Below, piece after piece: positions 31,967 through 64,000 of a DNA stretch of 64,000 bases. The DNA is from Podarcis pityusensis. Taxonomy: Eukaryota. Made by a program: the position numbers and the translations under genes. The notes under the pieces were generated by a model. It searched no databases. It saw only the letters and a program-made list of their open reading frames with translations, and was not told the origin of the DNA. Each line of letters starts with the position of its first letter. Within the stretch, counting starts at the first letter, position 1. The stretch is taken from NCBI GenBank assembly GCA_964106645.2, contig OZ067050.1; one strand, written 5' to 3'.

Positions 31967-32165
31967 TATTTTTCTTTTCCTTTTTAAAAAAGGGCTGAGG
32001 TTTTATTTATATTTTTTAATACCGCTCCACCCACAACCCTCGATTACATCAAAAATAAAGCCCAGTACGACCGCCCTGATACAAATCGGTGATTTGACTC
32101 CTCCCTCTTTCTTCACAGTTTGGCTTCTACCTGACGCGCCCATTCTGATTCTGGATGCGGCTTTG

Positions 32166-32687
32166 ATGTGGCTCCATCGCAGTGGTCCACCCCCTGCTAC
32201 GTTGTCAACGCCGGCCCCCTCGACGGGAGCCCAGATGCCTCCTTCCTCTGTGGCCTCCCCGCTCAGTGAGTGTGGCAGCTGCCTGCTGATCATGACAGGC
32301 ATTGCCTTCATTGCCGGCCTTTTCATCGTGATCTCGGCCATCCTCTGCGACCGGGTCTTCCGTGGGTCCCTGCCCTCAGAAAGAAGGGGGCTGCCGTCTG
32401 TCTGGAGGCAAGGCGGGACGCTGTGGATCGAGCCTTCCAGGAGCCGCAGGGAGCCAGATCTCCTATCTAGGCCATCAGAAACGGTGCCCCTTTGGATCCA
32501 GCGCTCAAATGACTGGTTTCTGGAGCAAGGGAGCTGCGATTCCCCCGAAGATACCCAGATGGAGACGCAGAGCCCAAGCAGCTCGGCCCCTTTCTGGGAT
32601 GACGGCGAACCCACCTGGCGGATACAGCCACGCGTCACCCTGCAGGACCTACAGAGCTTTTTCCAGCACAGCGGTCGGGGTACCTAG
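32166..32687 (+). CDS. C16orf54: Transmembrane protein C16orf54 homologue, 173 aa (alternative ATG at 32235)
   Basis: Single coding exon. CGSCLLIM-TM-DRVFR...VWRQGGTLWIEP and C-terminal W.IQPRVTLQDLQSFF match recalled human C16orf54 (CGPCIPIM...VWRPGGELWIEP...LQPRVTLEQISAFW). Synteny with ZG16 and SPN. AATAAA at 33473. Confidence 0.92.
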   Translation: MWLHRSGPPPATLSTPAPSTGAQMPPSSVASPLSECGSCLLIMTGIAFIAGLFIVISAILCDRVFRGSLPSERRGLPSVWRQGGTLWIEPSRSRREPDLLSRPSETVPLWIQRSNDWFLEQGSCDSPEDTQMETQSPSSSAPFWDDGEPTWRIQPRVTLQDLQSFFQHSGRGT

Positions 32688-35240: not shown

Positions 35241-36695
35241 TTATCTCCACCTGTTGCGGTTCCTGGTCTCGAAGTACTCCTCCTCCTCAGAGTCCATCTC
35301 CCCTTCCCCTTCCGATTCCGAGAATCCTTCCAACTCCTCCTCCTCATCGGTGGTCCCAAAGTATTCCCTCCGGAACCTCTCCACAGGCTGAGGTTTCCTT
35401 GGGAACCTTTGATGGAACGTTTCTATCAATACCTCGTCATTGATATCTTCTGCCATTACCCAAGTGTTTTCTGACTCCGGTTCTCCTTCCCACGCTACCA
35501 AATACTCCACCTGATCCCCCTTCCACCTGGCGTCGAGGATTTCTGCCACATGGCTGCTGCATTCCCTTTCTTCTATGACCGGTCCCCGAGTGGCCATCCC
35601 TTCTCGTCCCCCCTCATACGGTGACAGTAACGACCTGTGAAATACTGGGTGCAGTTTCATGTGGTTGGGTAACCGGAGCCTGAAAGCCACTGGGTTGACC
35701 TGTTGAATGACCTCAAAGGGACCCAATCTCCTGGGTCTTAATTTCTTACAACCTCCTTTGAACGGCAACCCTTGGGTTGACAGCCACACCCTATCTCCCA
35801 CCCTTATGGTTTCACCTTCCCTTCGGTTCTTGTCTGCCTGCCTCTTGTATTCTTCCTTCGCCCTTTCTAAGTTGAGTTGGAGCTGACGATGGATTGCTTC
35901 CATTTCTTCTACAAAATGCTCGGCTGCCAGGACACCCCATCTCTCCCCTTCTCCCCCTGGGAAAGCCCTGGGATGACACCCATAATTAGCCAAGAAGGGG
36001 CTCATCCCTGTGGACACATTCTCGGCATTGTTGTAGGCAAATTCCGCCAGCGCCAACTTTTCTACCCAGTCATTCTCTCTGTCATTGACATAACACCTCA
36101 GGTATTGCTGGAGGACCCCGTTTGCTCTTTCCGCCTGCCCGTTGGTTTCAGGGTGCCGGGCAGTCGAAAAGTTGACCTCCACCTGCAGTAAGCTCATGAG
36201 CTTCCTCCAGAACCTGGAAGTAAATTGTTTTCCTCGGTCTGAGACCACCCTCAATGGCACCCCGTGCAACCTAAAAATGTGTTCTACAAATAACTTCGCT
36301 GTCTCTTCCGCCGTGACTGCATGCGAGCAGGCTACAAAGTGGCACATCTTTGTTAGTAGGTCTACCACCACCATGATGGCTGTTTTCCCCTTGGACTTCG
36401 GCAGATCAGTCATAAAATCTATCGACACTGCCTCCCAAGGTCGTTCTGGGGTTGGTAAGGGTTCTAATAGCCCCGCCGGTGCCTGCCTCTCCCCTTTGGC
36501 TCGCTGGCATTGCTCACACCCTCTTACATACTCCCGTACATCTTCCCTCACCTTAGGCCACCAAAATTCCCTGGTGACCAACCACATGGTTTTGTGTTGT
36601 CCAAAATGCCCCGCCGTGGGGCTGTCGTGCAACTGCTTGAGTACCCTCCCCCTTAAGTCTCCTTCAGGGATATACAGTGCCCCTTTGTAATACAA
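35241..36695 (-). CDS. Gypsy integrase with chromodomain (pol remnant)
   Basis: HHCC zinc finger (HDSPTAGH...CEQC), DDE core (SIDF, SDRG, QAER), GPF module, chromodomain VAEILDARWKGDQVEYLVAWEGEPESENTW. No natural start of its own. Confidence 0.85.
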   Translation of the reverse strand: MYYKGALYIPEGDLRGRVLKQLHDSPTAGHFGQHKTMWLVTREFWWPKVREDVREYVRGCEQCQRAKGERQAPAGLLEPLPTPERPWEAVSIDFMTDLPKSKGKTAIMVVVDLLTKMCHFVACSHAVTAEETAKLFVEHIFRLHGVPLRVVSDRGKQFTSRFWRKLMSLLQVEVNFSTARHPETNGQAERANGVLQQYLRCYVNDRENDWVEKLALAEFAYNNAENVSTGMSPFLANYGCHPRAFPGGEGERWGVLAAEHFVEEMEAIHRQLQLNLERAKEEYKRQADKNRREGETIRVGDRVWLSTQGLPFKGGCKKLRPRRLGPFEVIQQVNPVAFRLRLPNHMKLHPVFHRSLLSPYEGGREGMATRGPVIEERECSSHVAEILDARWKGDQVEYLVAWEGEPESENTWVMAEDINDEVLIETFHQRFPRKPQPVERFRREYFGTTDEEEELEGFSESEGEGEMDSEEEEYFETRNRNRWR

Positions 36696-36784
36696 AGCTC
36701 CATTTCTTTCCTCGAAACCCCCTGGTTCCTCTCCCTCACCCCTAAGACCTCTGAGCTTATTCTGGGCGTATTCATCATTCTCTG

Positions 36785-37207
36785 TTTAATATCGCTGGAA
36801 AACATCAGATCCATGGCGCGAAAGAACTTCATCGTGTCCTTTAGGACGTCACTATTCGCTGCCATCAGGGGTCTAACCCAGTCTCTCGCCCCCTTTTCAA
36901 GATGCCCAATCACGAAAGCCACTCGTGATTCCTCGTCAGGGAATTCATCAAACTGCAGATTGAGGGCATATTGCATCTCTGTCCGAAAGCCATGATAGTC
37001 TTTGGGTTCCCCCCCAAACTTCTGCACCAATCCTGGTACCTTTCTGACGAGCTGGGTGTCTTTCCCCTTTTTGTCTGCATCCTGAGCCCTCCTCTCCTCA
37101 AGCCTCGCCGTCTGCAGCGCTAGCTGGACCTCCAACACCCGGTACCTTTCTTCCAGGCTTGGACCCGCTCCAGCTCCTGCTTCTCCGGTTCCGGCTGGGT
37201 TGCTCAT
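36785..37207 (-). CDS. Truncated Gypsy gag
   Basis: ATG 46 nt inside the 5' LTR; KFGGEPKDYHGF...FPDEESRVAFVIGHLEKGARDW resembles the Ty3/Gypsy capsid N-terminal domain; ends at the deletion junction. Confidence 0.8.
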
Positions 37208-54363: not shown

Positions 54364-56804
54364 CAAAGGGTCAAGCACCCAACAGTTAAGCTGGCTGTCG
54401 GGTGCTTGGGAACCTCACACAAGAGATTTTGACAGGTGGGAGGAACAACCTGCCTGTCAGTCACATGAAACCCCAGTGGTGTTACATGATTGACAAATGG
54501 GCTATTCTGCCCACCTGTCGACACTGGGCTGTGTTTCTCCACCTAACTGCTTAACTGGCCATATGTCATGAAACACACAATTAACATTTCTCTTCTCAGC
54601 CCCTCCCCATCATTCTAATTTTTCAGCTATGCCTATAAATTATATGTGCCATCATTTGTTAACTTTTTTTGAGTGATGCATTTCCTCCTTTTCCGGTGAT
54701 GCATCGGTTGCTGCCCTCCTGCAGATGTATGTGGATTTCAGACGTGAGAAATGTGTCTGTCTGGTAGGAAGTGCCACTCCTTGTGGTAACCCTTCCTAGA
54801 ACAGTTGTAGGCAGTTCTGCCCTCAACCAAGCCCCAGACACAAAATAGTGAGTGCTCCTGTCCACCATATTCCTTAGGAATTCCTCTTGATTGGAGCCCC
54901 ATTTTTTTAAAGTTCTCACGCACCTGACTTGAAAATACTGCTGGTTCATTTGTTGTCTGGTTTAAAAGAGAATTCACAGATGCCAAGATCCATGTTTGGC
55001 ACAAGTACTCTTTGGTAAGAGAACCCAAGCAGAGATTTAAAATTTTTAAAAATACACAGCAAAGTAAAGCGTGGAAATATAGGCTGGTGGATCTTTAAAA
55101 TATTCCTTTCTAAGATGCTTCCTAAGTCCTCCTCTTCCCTTAGCATAGAAAGAGACTACATGTTTGGCAAGTTAAAAATGGTTTGCATACAAAATCTTCA
55201 AAGATCAGGTTCATGTGCTTTCTCATATAGCAGTCAGAAAAAGACAGGCAGTAAAACTAAAGTTCTAAAGTGGTGAATGGTTATTTGCCTAGAAACAAAA
55301 GGATGGCTTGCAGAAAGCCATGAAGCTAAGCTGGAGCAACCAAGCTTAGCCTCCTTACTTGCAGGAGTGCAAATGGTGTAATGGGAAGAATGAAAGCTTG
55401 ATAACCCTTTCTCCCAAGATAAGAGAGAGTGACCTAAGCCTGTCAGGACAGCTTACTCTGTGGTCTTAACCCCTCCATGCATTAATTAGAGTTAAGCACG
55501 TTGGTTATATGGGACTGAGGATCCCACAAATACATCCTTTTATTCATCATATGCTTCTGTCCTTCTAGATTTGCTTACAACTCTCTTTCTTTCTAGCTAT
55601 CTATATTTTCCTCTCTTATCCAGAGCCGTCTTTCTCATTGGACTTAGTGGTTCGTTGTGCCAGGGTGCTGGCCTCTCAGGGGTGCCCTGGTGAGTGGGGG
55701 AGCTGCGCGGCTTTACCAGCAGCCTCCCCTTTCCCTGCACACCCGCCAGCTGCGCCCCGCCAACTATATGGTTGGCGGGCATGCAGCTTCCTTCCCAAGC
55801 CTCCACAGGAGGAGAGCGATCCCCACAGAGGCTTAGGATGGGAGCTGCACACACAGCTTCCCTCCCAAGCCTCTGCGTCTGCTAAAGATGGCCCTGCTCC
55901 CGGTCGCTGTCCTCCTCCTGCTTCCTGGCAAAAGGAGGTGCGCAGCCTTCCTGGGCTGCCTTCTCGGGCGGCCTGACACCAGAGAACATGTCCTCCAGCA
56001 CGTTTTCCTGCTTGATCGCCACCACCACGCCAGGGATCGGGGCGGTGGGGGAGGCAGAGGACATTTTCCACCGCCCCCTCCCTTGTTTTGGAGTTGCTGG
56101 GGGGCGGCGGCAGAGGGATCTTTGCACACGGCGCTGGATATGCTTAAGATGGCCCTACTCTTATCCAATGTATATCATGTTCATTTCAAAGAGCTGGGGA
56201 AGGTTGATAGCACAGTGGTTAGAGCATCTGCTTTGAGTGCAGAATGTCCCGGGTTTAATCCCCAGGGCTGGGGAAAAGATCCCTGTCCGAAATCCCGAAG
56301 AGCCATTACCAGTGAGTGGGGACAGCACTGAGTTAGATAGACCAAGTGGTTTGACTCTGTATAAGACAGCTTCCTTTTATGTTACTAGCGAACATCTTTT
56401 ACATTAAAGCAATACTGTACAAATCAATTCACCAAATAAAACTAGTTTGCAAGACTAGAGACAGGGTGCGGTCAGCTCCAGACCTTGTTAAACGCTGGAA
56501 AGGAATTTTGCTGTGGGGTGTCCTGAGCCAAACAAGACACAATGCCCTAGGAGACATCCATGATGTGTAGCTCCACATGATCTGAGCATGAAGTCCCCAA
56601 CCCATCAGAAGAATTCACGGGTCCCTAATTTAAAAAACCCAGGTGTTTAGATATTCTCTTACTCCTCTCTCTTTTCAGTGCAATCTTCCAGGGGGGAAAA
56701 TGTTTTTAAAAAACTTTTCACATTTTGTTCTCAGGTTGCTGTTCCGTGTTGCTCCACTACATATCACTAGCCAAGCAGGCCCTGCCCTCTGGAGTTCTGC
56801 CGCC

Positions 56805-57977
56805 ATGGAAACGCGATCCCTTCTCAGGCAAATAATTGGCTACGGCATGCCCTTTGGCGTCCTTATTCTTTTGACCGTGGCTGCACATGTTGATGGGCAA
56901 GTTTCTGCTACTTCAGACACACGGCCTGTGGGGACCACCATCTTTCCCCCCACGTCAACTTTCACAACTGAAAGGGTGGACACAGAGCTTGCAACCTCAC
57001 CCTCTCCAGCCAAGCCTTCAGCTCTCCCCTTGTCTCAGTCCACTGCTGCAGCTAAAAAACTGTCTCTAAAAACAGCCACTACAGAGATTATTCTCCAAGA
57101 GAGCAGTACAGATGAAGATGAAACTATCACCAACAATACATCAGGCCCCCATCCCTCTACCGGCCCTGCGATCAGCCTTACCACAGAAACAGCTGCTGTG
57201 GGACAAAAATTTGCGATCAGACCTACCACAGAAGCAGCTGTTGTGGGACAAAAAACTGGTACAACCAGTGGCGTGGCAAACCCTCTCAATACAACAACAG
57301 CCCCTCTCGAGACTACTGTTGGGAGTACATCTGGCATCAAACCAAGGTCAAATTCAAAACAGACTACCAAGGGTGAAGCACAGCCAAGTCCGAAGCCAGA
57401 ACAAGATGTGGTAGATGACACCAAAACAATGGACAACCGCACCCATTGGCCTGCTCAGTGGCCCTCAACCACGACAGCTGTCCCCCAAACAACAAGCGCT
57501 GTCCTTGGCCCAAGAGCAAGTTCTGAGAACAACAGCCAGACTGGAATAATTGTGGCCGCTGTCCTCTGTGCCCTTCTGTTCCTGATCCTCTTGATTGCCA
57601 TCCTCCTTTGCTGGCGAAGGCGCCGCTCTGGCTCAACCAGCTTCAACGAGGGGTGGGCAGGCCAGGTGGCGCTGCCAGACGACTCGGCCTTGGATCGGGA
57701 TGTGGAGCAAGGGGCAGTGCCTGCAAAGGAAGAGGAGACCAAGCGCAACACACTCATCACGTTCTCCGGCAAGCGTCAGTCAAGGGTGCCTTCGGTAGCC
57801 ATGGAGGAAATAGGCGAGAAAGGAGAGAGCGGGGAGAACCAGAAACTGCTTTGTGGAGATGCTGGCGGAGGCTCCAGCCCAGAGGCTTCTGGGAAAGCAA
57901 ATGGTAGACTCTCAGAATCCACCATGCAGTCCTCTCAAGAGATCGTGTTCCCCCCACCCCCAGCTAACCAGGAGTAG
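56805..57977 (+). CDS. SPN: Leukosialin (sialophorin, CD43), 390 aa
   Basis: Single coding exon after acceptor 56733-56734, Kozak GCCGCCATGG, signal peptide, S/T/P mucin ectodomain, TM, tail WRRRRSG...WAGQVALP...RNTLITFSGKRQSR..SVAMEE matching recalled CD43 (WAGPAQVP...RPTLTTFFGRRKSR..SLAMEE). Synteny with C16orf54 and ZG16. Confidence 0.92.
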   Translation: METRSLLRQIIGYGMPFGVLILLTVAAHVDGQVSATSDTRPVGTTIFPPTSTFTTERVDTELATSPSPAKPSALPLSQSTAAAKKLSLKTATTEIILQESSTDEDETITNNTSGPHPSTGPAISLTTETAAVGQKFAIRPTTEAAVVGQKTGTTSGVANPLNTTTAPLETTVGSTSGIKPRSNSKQTTKGEAQPSPKPEQDVVDDTKTMDNRTHWPAQWPSTTTAVPQTTSAVLGPRASSENNSQTGIIVAAVLCALLFLILLIAILLCWRRRRSGSTSFNEGWAGQVALPDDSALDRDVEQGAVPAKEEETKRNTLITFSGKRQSRVPSVAMEEIGEKGESGENQKLLCGDAGGGSSPEASGKANGRLSESTMQSSQEIVFPPPPANQE

Positions 57978-61499: not shown

Positions 61500-63206
61500 T
61501 CACACCCCCACTTCACGCCCTCTGTTGTCGTCATCCTTCTCCTCCGACTCCTCAGAGCACACTTCTTCGTGGCTTTCCTCTTCCTTCTCCCCGCACATTC
61601 TCTGGCAGCTCTCGTTCCAGCACATCCGCAGGTGGAAGTAGCCGGCGCAGGTGATGATGAAAAGGATGGAGGTGAAAACCAGCCCCCACAGCGCCACCCG
61701 CTTCTCAGCCCTGCCATTTATGGTGCACTCAATTCTCTGCTGGCACCTGGTAGTCGACGGGGTGCATACCCAATACGCACTCCAGAGCCTGGGCATCTGG
61801 AAGATGAAAATGACACAGAGGAAAGAGATCTCCAAGGCAAGGATAAGTCCCACCCAGATATCAAAGAGGGGGACACCACAGATGTTAGTGATCCTGGGCC
61901 TCTTCTTCCGCCTAGAAGAAGATTCTCTGTGTCGGTCATGGTGGTGGGCAGCTTCACACGGCGGGGTCGCGTGACATGGCTCAGCCTCGGTGCATGTGCA
62001 GGCCGTGTCTCCATGGTAACACAGCATCGGTCCGGCAGCCATGCCTGGTCCGGACATGACCTGTGCCTGGCCAACGGGTTTGCAGTGGGAGTCTCCAGCC
62101 ATCCATGGCTGGTTGCACACATTGCCTCCAAAGTTCCCATCACTCCCGCCTGTGGTGTCAAAGGTTACGTGGCGCTGGCCGTGCACCTTACACCCCTGAG
62201 CTGGCCTGCGTTTGATGGCCATGTTTGCTTTGTCATCTACCCAGGGATGGGCAGGGACATAGCCCATGCTGCCTTCGGTGTCTGACTTGCATTTGGTGGC
62301 CGTGCGGTATTTGCCATCATCATGGATACCTTGGCCGATGTATCTTTTAGGTGTGCCCATAGCATACCCATCATTAGCTAAACCACCCGATTCTTGAGGG
62401 TTGGCGTATCTCCAATGGAGGGGTTCTCTGTGCTCGTCACCTGACCAAGACTGAGGGGACATTTTGCCTTTGTAAGGTGAGCCGCTAAGGGAGGCCGAGG
62501 TGCTCTTGGTGGCCACGTGGCACTGCTCCTTTTCGCCACAATAGGATGCCGCAGTGGTTTGCCTCATGTGACCTTGATGTGCGGCCATCTTGGTTTGCCT
62601 AGTGTCCGTTGGACCGTAGCTCACACTGGGGCCATACCCTTCAGCCATGGGAGCCGCATGCCCCCCATGCCAATCATCCCAGTGGGTATAGTAAGGATGG
62701 TGGGCATGGTGGCGATGGTGGGCATGGTCGTGGCCATAGTGCCTAGGGAGACCACGGCGCCCAACATTGTAGATGGTGGATATGTCGGGGACGCCACTGT
62801 GGGATGCTGTGGCAACAATGGCCAAGCCTTCCCCTTTATCCCTATCCTCTTTCTCTCTCCTCTTCTTCTTCTTCTTCTCCTTGGGGGTGGTGAGCCGCAG
62901 GAGCCCTACGAGAAGGATCAACGCGATGAATACCAGCCCCCATGTTGCTGCGATGGAGACGGGAAAATGTTGGTTGTAGCACAGGGCTGTGCAGAAGTCT
63001 CGCGACAGGTCGCCTTCGCCCTCGGTGATACTGCAGCTGGTGTCGTCTTTGATCTTGTCCCAGGGGCCGTTGGCGAAGAAGATGGCCATGATGCGGAGGC
63101 CCAGCAGGAAGTACCATGGGTTCAAGCCCTCGCAGTCGAGTGCACCGGAGAGGGAGGATAGCAATGGTCGAAAGAGATGGATAAGACCTGAGAGGATGAT
63201 GGACAT
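61500..63206 (-). CDS. Highly divergent connexin-like four-TM protein, 568 aa
   Basis: Intact single-exon ORF with a splice acceptor directly before the ATG. TM1 LGLRIMAIFF-W, EL1 C-x13-C-x3-CYNQHFPVS, TM2, loop of roughly 330 aa, TM3 LEISFL, EL2 C-x6-C-x5-C...RAEK, TM4, short acidic tail. Confidence 0.8.
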   Translation of the reverse strand: MSIILSGLIHLFRPLLSSLSGALDCEGLNPWYFLLGLRIMAIFFANGPWDKIKDDTSCSITEGEGDLSRDFCTALCYNQHFPVSIAATWGLVFIALILLVGLLRLTTPKEKKKKKRREKEDRDKGEGLAIVATASHSGVPDISTIYNVGRRGLPRHYGHDHAHHRHHAHHPYYTHWDDWHGGHAAPMAEGYGPSVSYGPTDTRQTKMAAHQGHMRQTTAASYCGEKEQCHVATKSTSASLSGSPYKGKMSPQSWSGDEHREPLHWRYANPQESGGLANDGYAMGTPKRYIGQGIHDDGKYRTATKCKSDTEGSMGYVPAHPWVDDKANMAIKRRPAQGCKVHGQRHVTFDTTGGSDGNFGGNVCNQPWMAGDSHCKPVGQAQVMSGPGMAAGPMLCYHGDTACTCTEAEPCHATPPCEAAHHHDRHRESSSRRKKRPRITNICGVPLFDIWVGLILALEISFLCVIFIFQMPRLWSAYWVCTPSTTRCQQRIECTINGRAEKRVALWGLVFTSILFIITCAGYFHLRMCWNESCQRMCGEKEEESHEEVCSEESEEKDDDNRGREVGV

Positions 63207-64000
63207 CTGTGGAGAGACAGGGGTAGGGGTGGGAAAGGGGAGGTTAGGCCTCAGGCAGGAACCTGCATTGGAATTCTACCCAGGGCCAGCACTGGGATTT
63301 GGTACCACTGGGCAATAACTGAGGTACACTCCACAACAGAGGCCCCACTGTCGACCCACAGAGCCTTTAGCCCCCTCCTTGCCCTCACTTCTTGTTCACC
63401 TGCCCTATGCAAGCAACCACACAAGCGAAGAGAGGAAGTGGCTCTCTATATCTGCCTTGCCTTCTCCTTCTGGGTGTTAGCCACGTTGGGTTCATGGCAA
63501 AAAAATGGGGAGCAGGCACTGTGACATAGAGAAGATGGACTTGCTCGGGGAGGGGTGCCCACAGAAGGCCTCCTGCCCCCCTCAAATCTAGTCAATGTGC
63601 TTGCATTATTTGGGGTGAACCAAACTGGGCTGTGGGGCGAAGGGGAAAAGCACAGAACTCTCTTCCTCAGCTTCCAGGGTGGACATAGGAAGAGCCCCAG
63701 CAGATCAGGCCAAAGGCCCATCTAGTCCTGCAGCTGTCAGGCTTCAGGGAATCAGCTTCCTCCCCCATGGCCGTAAATGAGCAGATCAAGCAAAAGGAGT
63801 TCTTACCAGTTAGTTTCTTTAATAAACACAGCGAAGAACGAAAGAGAGCGTCTACCCAGAATGGAGGTACTCCCAATTAAGGGTCACTCCCCCCTCCATC
63901 CCTATTAATCTACTTCACTCCTACGTCTTGTATTCTGGGTTTGTAGCCTCTGGGCTTTCTGTTCTTACATTTTCTGAGCTCTCCATGACTTTGGAGATGG

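What the first reader, a model, noticed from the sequence alone, without database searches (positions are those of the whole stretch)
61500..63206. Non-canonical connexin-like gene with altered cysteine spacing and a giant His-rich loop
Seen: a 568-codon ORF with four hydrophobic segments, three Cys in each extracellular loop, CYNQHFPVS, an Arg in TM1, a Glu in TM3 and RAEK before TM4, with an acceptor directly before the ATG. Known: connexins have this topology and single-exon layout, with EL1 C-x6-C-x3-C (CYD..FPIS) and EL2 C-x4/5-C-x5-C (RPTEK). Here EL1 is C-x13-C-x3-C with an acidic insert, EL2 is C-x6-C-x5-C, and the MGDW-type N-terminus and TM2 proline are absent. I know of no connexin at the human SPN locus. 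Inference: an unclassified connexin lineage, possibly a non-docking hemichannel, lost from mammals.
Basis: partly seen in the sequence, partly recalled or inferred. Interest (0 to 1): 0.9.

Follow-up and report, generated by a model that had tools for sequence, protein, structure and literature searches.

The report
Long-loop zeta connexin of lizards
This is a real, conserved wall-lizard gene for a gap-junction-type channel protein of the barely studied 'zeta' (gjz1) connexin subfamily; it is one of three reptile tandem copies, and in lizards and snakes it carries an unusually long inner loop and probably works as an unpaired channel.

Summary
The 568-aa ORF (61500-63206, minus strand) is real: Pfam Connexin above cut-off, all six loop cysteines, a connexin fold in the model of an ortholog, a conserved acceptor before the ATG, intact orthologs across squamates, dN/dS 0.2-0.3 in the core. 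It is not unclassified. It belongs to the divergent zeta subfamily named from zebrafish gjz1/Cx26.3 (PMC9073686). It is not gjz1's one-to-one ortholog: it descends from a tandem sister copy (4 kb from gjz1 in gar) that became three genes in sauropsids. This is the SPN-adjacent copy, with turtle, alligator and owl counterparts. Its odd features are mostly subfamily traits: variable EL1 spacing, an uncharged N-terminus, no R75, and no TM2 proline in gjz1. Particular to the squamate copy are a 340-550 aa loop and the absence of an EL1 N-glycosylation sequon that most other zeta connexins carry. His-richness is local and the acidic insert lacertid-only. No named mammalian member was found, but the paper claims some; unresolved. 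Most likely a non-docking hemichannel (about 50%); function and expression untested. The scan had no earlier connexin note.

The parts
61500..63206 (-). Single-exon CDS of a 568-aa zeta-subfamily connexin (sauropsid copy C; ortholog of Podarcis muralis LOC114581873)
63207..63245 (-). Polypyrimidine tract and CAG splice acceptor directly before the ATG; the upstream exon was not located
   Evidence: the same layout in Pogona, two Logan squamate contigs and the paralogs; RefSeq isoforms X1/X2 differ by a 3-aa N-terminal extension; one search found no upstream exon
63144..63206 (-). N-terminal helix (aa 1-21), hydrophobic, no acidic residue, almost invariant in squamates
63057..63122 (-). TM1 (about aa 29-50) with invariant W31 and R38
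62955..63056 (-). EL1 (about aa 51-84): C58-x13-C72-x3-C76, 7 residues longer than canonical; no N-x-S/T sequon
62892..62954 (-). TM2 (about aa 85-105): W89 kept; the R75 and proline equivalents are absent
61872..62891 (-). 340-aa cytoplasmic loop, predicted disordered, polybasic at both ends, with short conserved motifs; dN/dS about 0.4
62658..62741 (-). His cluster (12 His in aa 156-183), variable among orthologs
61782..61871 (-). TM3 (about aa 446-475) with invariant E459
61701..61781 (-). EL2 (about aa 476-502): C481-x6-C488-x5-C494, E493, RAEK
61500..61700 (-). TM4 (about aa 503-527) and a short Cys-rich then acidic C-terminal tail
56643..57977 (+). Neighbouring CD43/SPN-like gene, tail to tail; synteny marker, not part of the connexin

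Best explanation
Shown: a functional-looking connexin of the zeta subfamily. An ancestral zeta gene was duplicated in tandem (gjz1 proper and a second copy, here called zeta-2). Zeta-2 expanded in sauropsids into three same-strand genes, A (short), B and C; this is C, next to SPN, and in squamates its TM2-TM3 loop grew to 340-550 aa. Inferred: six subunits assemble into a connexon with a disulfide-bonded extracellular cap. Because the docking face is remodelled, the connexon most likely works unpaired, as a hemichannel for ions or small metabolites, like Cx31.3. The uncharged N-terminal helix suggests no canonical transjunctional voltage sensor, and gating or localisation would be set by the long disordered loop (binding partners, phosphorylation, perhaps pH or metal through His/Cys) and by juxtamembrane cysteines. 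Family placement about 0.9; hemichannel mode about 0.5.
For: Pfam Connexin 41.2 bits against a cut-off of 31.3. The ortholog model has a confident four-helix core; connexins take ranks 1-7 in a wide structure search, best Cx50 Z 14.9, rmsd 2.2 over 155 residues, and all listed Foldseek rows are connexins though none reaches E 0.001. A zeta-2-only profile scores gjz1 proteins 124-178 bits and solved canonical connexins at most 65. Tree: gjz1 against zeta-2 100/100; squamate C with turtle, alligator and owl C 99/87. Tandem arrangement in gar, Podarcis, Pogona and alligator. dN/dS 0.20-0.31 in the core. Docking face: 7-residue EL1 insertion, QPG replaced, N54 equivalent is Ser here, N176 equivalent never Asn, D179 to Glu, R75 to Ala, R184 displaced. 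PMC7455182 attributes the failure of Cx31.3 to dock to loss of N54 and D179.
Against: All six cysteines are invariant. The N54 equivalent is Asn in 10 of 12 squamate orthologs sampled and E493 is invariant, so a private docking code is possible. Copy C lacks the EL1 sequon, which removes one obvious block to docking. No hexamer was modelled. The window protein's own model was poor (mean pLDDT 37.6, shallow alignment), so the fold rests on an ortholog about 57-64% identical. A Z near 13-15 is only a little above unrelated helical bundles.
Confidence: 0.5

Rival explanations
1. It forms true gap junctions with a private, homotypic or zeta-only docking code. Loss of the ancestral EL1 glycan site in copies B and C re-enabled docking, and the longer EL1 builds a new interface.
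For: Six cysteines, EL1 length fixed at 13 in all 24 squamate sequences, invariant E493, Asn after C1 in most orthologs, sequon absent in 0/24 C and present in only 1/12 B against 103/115 gjz1.
Against: N176, QPG, R75 and E47 equivalents are lost; the insert sequence itself is variable, and the lacertid copy lacks the N54 equivalent.
Confidence: 0.25
2. It is a poorly conducting or non-conducting connexin: a membrane scaffold or adhesion protein whose loop does the work, or a modifier subunit that co-assembles with the short paralog A or with B.
For: The loop is 60% of the protein and under constraint (dN/dS about 0.4); three co-located paralogs; conserved inter-subunit residues are lost; the N-terminal helix is long and hydrophobic.
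Against: The core keeps W31, R38, W89, E459, K502 and all six cysteines across the whole family, and is more constrained than the loop.
Confidence: 0.2
3. It is the direct one-to-one ortholog of zebrafish gjz1.
For: A gjz1-only profile scores it 97 bits; both lack the TM2 proline; no amniote gjz1 proper was found. On a trimmed alignment the grouping was not rejected (p-AU 0.063).
Against: Gar, coelacanth, caecilian and newt carry both types; the window gene groups with the second at 100/100; p-AU 0.008 on the full 182-column alignment.
Confidence: 0.07
4. It is a decaying pseudogene or a chance ORF.
For: No direct expression evidence was obtained; the lacertid copy is about 60 aa shorter in the loop and has a few changes at conserved sites (S59, Q489).
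Against: Intact ORF in more than 20 squamate sequences, dN/dS well below 1, conserved acceptor.
Confidence: 0.02

Closest known systems
Zebrafish gjz1/Cx26.3 (si:rp71-1c10.10), zeta subfamily; PMC9073686
   Same: Same divergent clade; six cysteines; W31, R38, E459, EK; uncharged N-terminus; no R75 and no TM2 proline; tandem neighbour of the zeta-2 gene in gar.
   Different: A sister paralog, not an ortholog. Loop 340 aa against about 50; EL1 x13 against mostly x6-8; EL1 sequon absent against 103/115 present; Cys-rich tail.
Sauropsid zeta-2 paralogs A (Podarcis LOC114582367) and B (LOC114582366)
   Same: Same tandem cluster and strand; EL1 x12-14, EL2 x6-x5; acceptor before the ATG.
   Different: Short loops in squamates (30-73 aa). 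A keeps the CNWT sequon and the TM2 proline; B has a long C-terminal tail.
Cx31.3/GJC3, a hemichannel-only connexin; PMC7455182
   Same: Six cysteines but altered docking residues; a functional analogy only.
   Different: Among the lowest-scoring canonical connexins against the zeta profiles; no special kinship.
Canonical connexins Cx26, Cx32, Cx43, Cx50, Cx36
   Same: Fold, topology, coding region in one exon, cysteine number.
   Different: EL1 x6 with N-T-L-Q-P-G, R75, TM2 proline, charged N-terminus, shorter loops.

Membership tests
Connexin family (PF00029) | Profile match above the curated cut-off | tested here: met
   41.2 bits against 31.3, E 2e-10, two stretches
Connexin family (PF00029) | Four-TM connexin fold | tested here: met
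   On ortholog P0002: core pLDDT above 90; connexins rank 1-7, Z 14.9, rmsd 2.2 over 155. The window's own model was uninformative.
Connexin family (PF00029) | Three cysteines in each extracellular loop | tested here: met
   C58/72/76 and C481/488/494; these columns are invariant or nearly so
Connexin family (PF00029) | Hexamer and channel activity | not testable with these tools
   Monomer prediction only; no assay
Canonical alpha-epsilon connexin orthogroups | EL1 C-x6-C-x3-C and EL2 C-x4/5-C-x5-C | tested here: not met
   x13/x3 and x6/x5
Canonical alpha-epsilon connexin orthogroups | Conserved R75, TM2 proline, N54/N176/D179 docking set | tested here: not met
   A87, no proline, S59, Q490, E493
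Canonical alpha-epsilon connexin orthogroups | Placement inside a named orthogroup in a rooted tree | not tested
   No full canonical sequences were at hand; profile scores point away (at most 65 bits against 124-178 for gjz1). Epsilon (GJE1) is not among the solved structures compared.
Zeta (gjz1-like) subfamily | Closer to proteins named gjz1 than to canonical connexins | tested here: met
   Single-sequence scores 68 bits (sturgeon gjz1 type) against at most 15; reciprocal profiles. The zebrafish protein itself was not retrieved; database-named gjz1 and Danio aesculapii stood in.
Zeta (gjz1-like) subfamily | Shared derived motifs: W-x6-R in TM1, uncharged N-terminus, no R75 | tested here: met
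Zeta (gjz1-like) subfamily | Genomic link to the gjz1 locus | tested here: inconclusive
   gjz1 and zeta-2 are tandem in gar and share chromosome lengths in caecilian and newt; no flanking gene shared between fish and lizard was shown
gjz1 orthogroup in the strict sense | Monophyly with fish and amphibian gjz1 | tested here: not met
   100/100 split; p-AU 0.008 on 182 columns, but 0.063 on a trimmed 162-column set

The most novel reading that the evidence does not exclude
Zeta connexins are an overlooked sixth subfamily whose ancestral members are N-glycosylated at the EL1 docking tip, like pannexins, and so work as hemichannels. The sauropsid copies B and C lost that site and rebuilt EL1, and squamate C became a docking-competent or otherwise re-purposed channel controlled by a giant loop. 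That would be a natural switch between hemichannel and gap junction within one gene cluster.
Probability: 0.15. Interest if true: 0.8.

Novelty: new variant of a known kind. Interest (0 to 1): 0.48.

Why it matters
The zeta subfamily has one mention in the searched literature, no known phenotype, and was left out of the main vertebrate connexin phylogeny (PMC7914757). This locus shows that it persists in lizards, snakes, turtles, crocodilians and at least one bird as a tandem cluster that databases leave unnamed or mislabel as GJB/GJA-like. The three paralogs differ in EL1 sequon, TM2 proline and loop length, which gives natural variants for testing what makes a connexin dock. Nothing here shows new chemistry or a new kind of system.

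Tried and rejected
The + strand reading has stops; the gene is on the minus strand. Single-sequence and squamate-only profile searches of the PDB gave nothing significant; short paralogs were needed. AlphaFold on the 19-sequence alignment failed; a 115-sequence alignment on an ortholog worked. Two Logan contigs of orthologs retain the acceptor, so they look genomic and say nothing on expression. A special link to Cx31.3 was rejected (low scores). A pannexin, innexin or LRRC8 identity was rejected (lower Z, higher rmsd, no profile match). Earlier scan notes hold nothing on connexins.

Full report
Observation. The finding is an uninterrupted 568-codon ORF on the minus strand at 61500-63206. A pyrimidine tract and CAG lie directly before the ATG, and the same layout is seen in Pogona, two other squamate contigs and the paralogs. 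Three segments are strongly hydrophobic and TM1 is weak, about 1.2. The TM2-TM3 loop is 340 aa. It is 8.5% His overall, with 12 His in residues 156-183; orthologs range from 2.3 to 8.7%, so 'His-rich' is only partly true. The protein differs by 5 residues from a Podarcis lilfordi and 10 from a P. raffonei protein and is 97% identical to P. muralis LOC114581873, so the genome is most likely a Podarcis wall lizard.

It is a connexin. Pfam Connexin scores 41.2 bits, above the 31.3 cut-off. Folding the window protein on a shallow alignment failed. The Rhineura ortholog on a 115-sequence alignment gave a four-helix core and extracellular strands at pLDDT above 90, with a disordered loop. In the wide structure search the first seven rows are connexins (Cx50 Z 14.9, rmsd 2.2 over 155 residues), with unrelated bundles from Z 12.4 down. 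All listed Foldseek rows are connexins, none at E 0.001.

It is under selection. Full-length orthologs of 568-783 aa occur in lacertids, an amphisbaenian, agamids, an anole, an anguid, a cordylid, a skink, geckos and snakes. Nei-Gojobori dN/dS is 0.20-0.31 in the membrane core and 0.26-0.46 in the loop (five sequences, a rough method). In Pogona and P. muralis the gene lies tail to tail with the same CD43/SPN-like gene as here.

Family. An exhaustive search of 50% cluster representatives returned 33 relatives from squamates, turtles, crocodilians, an owl, amphibians, coelacanth, gar, sturgeon, teleosts, sharks and rays. One is named gjz1, and a profile of the short members retrieved many proteins named gjz1 or 'Gap junction protein zeta 1'. 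gjz1/Cx26.3 was reported in zebrafish as a previously unreported connexin that forms an outgroup to the rest, with no known phenotype and expression listed as nervous system (PMC9073686). PMC7914757 left such genes out, noting they might be another subfamily. A profile built without gjz1 proper scores 115 gjz1 proteins at 124-178 bits and solved canonical connexins at no more than 65; a gjz1-only profile scores the window protein at 97 bits.

Position in the family. A maximum-likelihood tree of 70 proteins on 182 core columns splits gjz1 proper (fish, coelacanth, amphibians) from a second lineage at 100/100. That lineage holds coelacanth, gar, caecilian, newt, cartilaginous-fish and all sauropsid sequences. 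The tree has no canonical outgroup and some long branches. The sauropsid sequences form a 100/99 clade with a short type A (not monophyletic in this tree), a type B, and a type C; squamate C groups with turtle, alligator and owl genes at 99/87. Forcing squamate C together with gjz1 was rejected on the full alignment (p-AU 0.008) but not on a trimmed one (0.063). Gar has both zeta types 4 kb apart on one strand. P. muralis has B about 60 kb upstream of C, Pogona has A about 68 kb upstream of C beside a TNFRSF12A-domain gene, Alligator sinensis has a 3-beta-HSD gene followed by A, B and C, and an owl has a 3-beta-HSD gene, C and an SPN-like gene.

Which oddities are special. The first EL1 spacing runs from 5 to 20 across the subfamily: mostly 6-8 in gjz1, 7 in anamniote zeta-2, 12-14 in most sauropsid copies, exactly 13 in all 24 squamate C sequences. 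The TM2 proline is missing in gjz1 (0/23), B (0/7) and squamate C (0/12) but present in A, turtle/archosaur C and sharks. The R75 equivalent and N-terminal acidic residues are missing across nearly the whole clade. The very long loop marks squamate C (340-546 aa), with separate expansions in alligator B and archosaur C. An N-x-S/T sequon directly after the first EL1 cysteine, at the Cx26 N54 position, is present in 103/115 gjz1, 5/5 cartilaginous-fish, 5/6 anamniote zeta-2 and 27/30 A sequences, but in 0/24 squamate C and 1/12 B. These counts include close relatives and are not independent events, and glycosylation is not shown.

Mechanism. That it assembles as a hexamer is inferred from the family. 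Against Cx26 and Cx32 the docking face has a 7-residue EL1 insertion, no QPG, Ser at N54 (Asn in 10 of 12 orthologs), no Asn at N176, Glu at D179, Ala at R75 and Gly at R184. PMC7455182 attributes the inability of Cx31.3 to form junctions to changes at N54 and D179, and extracellular glycans are held to block pannexin docking (PMC8769644). I rate an unpaired hemichannel regulated by the loop at about 0.5, a junction with a private docking code at 0.25, and a scaffold or modifier subunit at 0.2. None of this is tested.

Mammals. No named mammalian protein appeared, but those searches are limited, three representatives were unnamed and one was not looked up, and PMC9073686 says gjz1 is conserved in mammals on the basis of an Ensembl tree. 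Loss in mammals is unresolved.

Limits. The zebrafish gjz1 sequence itself was not retrieved. The names SPN, HSD3B7 and TNFRSF12A rest on Pfam hits or my memory.

Verdict. Interest 0.48.

Noticed in passing
gjz1-type proteins P0035, P0070-P0181; shark and ray P0037-P0045; paralog A P0066, P0068, P0207-P0234: A conserved N-x-S/T sequon right after the first EL1 cysteine in most zeta connexins (103/115 gjz1, 27/30 paralog A), absent from copies B and C. It may mean pannexin-like glycosylation in a connexin.
   Followed up: partly
L002:10001-11224; L003:11346-12137; L006:10001-11710; L010:2693-18030: Three-gene same-strand zeta cluster in sauropsids. In A. sinensis the third copy (about L010:16599-18030) reads in two frames near an assembly gap and is not among the called genes.
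   Followed up: partly
L004:5384-11756: Gar gjz1 and the second zeta gene lie in tandem about 4 kb apart. No zeta-2 copy was seen among the teleost hits and no gjz1 proper among the amniote hits.
   Followed up: partly
P0035, P0039, P0057, P0063, P0072, P0074: Databases label zeta connexins as GJB1/2/3/5-like or GJA3/4/9-like. The ray protein named gjz1 (P0045) falls in the zeta-2 side of the tree.
   Followed up: partly
P0021, P0023, P0026, P0031, P0036: Turtle, alligator and owl loops expanded through short repeats with an NMAA/KMAA motif, unlike the squamate C loop.
   Followed up: no
P0019, P0031, P0050, P0051: Several database models appear to fuse two tandem zeta genes into one protein.
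   Followed up: no
window 35241-37207 (-): Gypsy-type retroelement pieces: gag-like ORF and integrase with chromodomain; already noted by the scan.
   Followed up: no
window 32094-32687 (+): 197-aa single-TM ORF resembling C16orf54 (from memory), consistent with human 16p11.2 synteny.
   Followed up: no
L006:4873-5311 against L001:3128-3540: A stretch of about 440 bp, 67% identical between Podarcis and Pogona, 5-7 kb upstream of the gene; candidate first exon or regulatory element, or a shared repeat.
   Followed up: no
L007:16585-20824: In the owl a MACPF plus C2 (perforin-like) gene follows the SPN-like gene.
   Followed up: no
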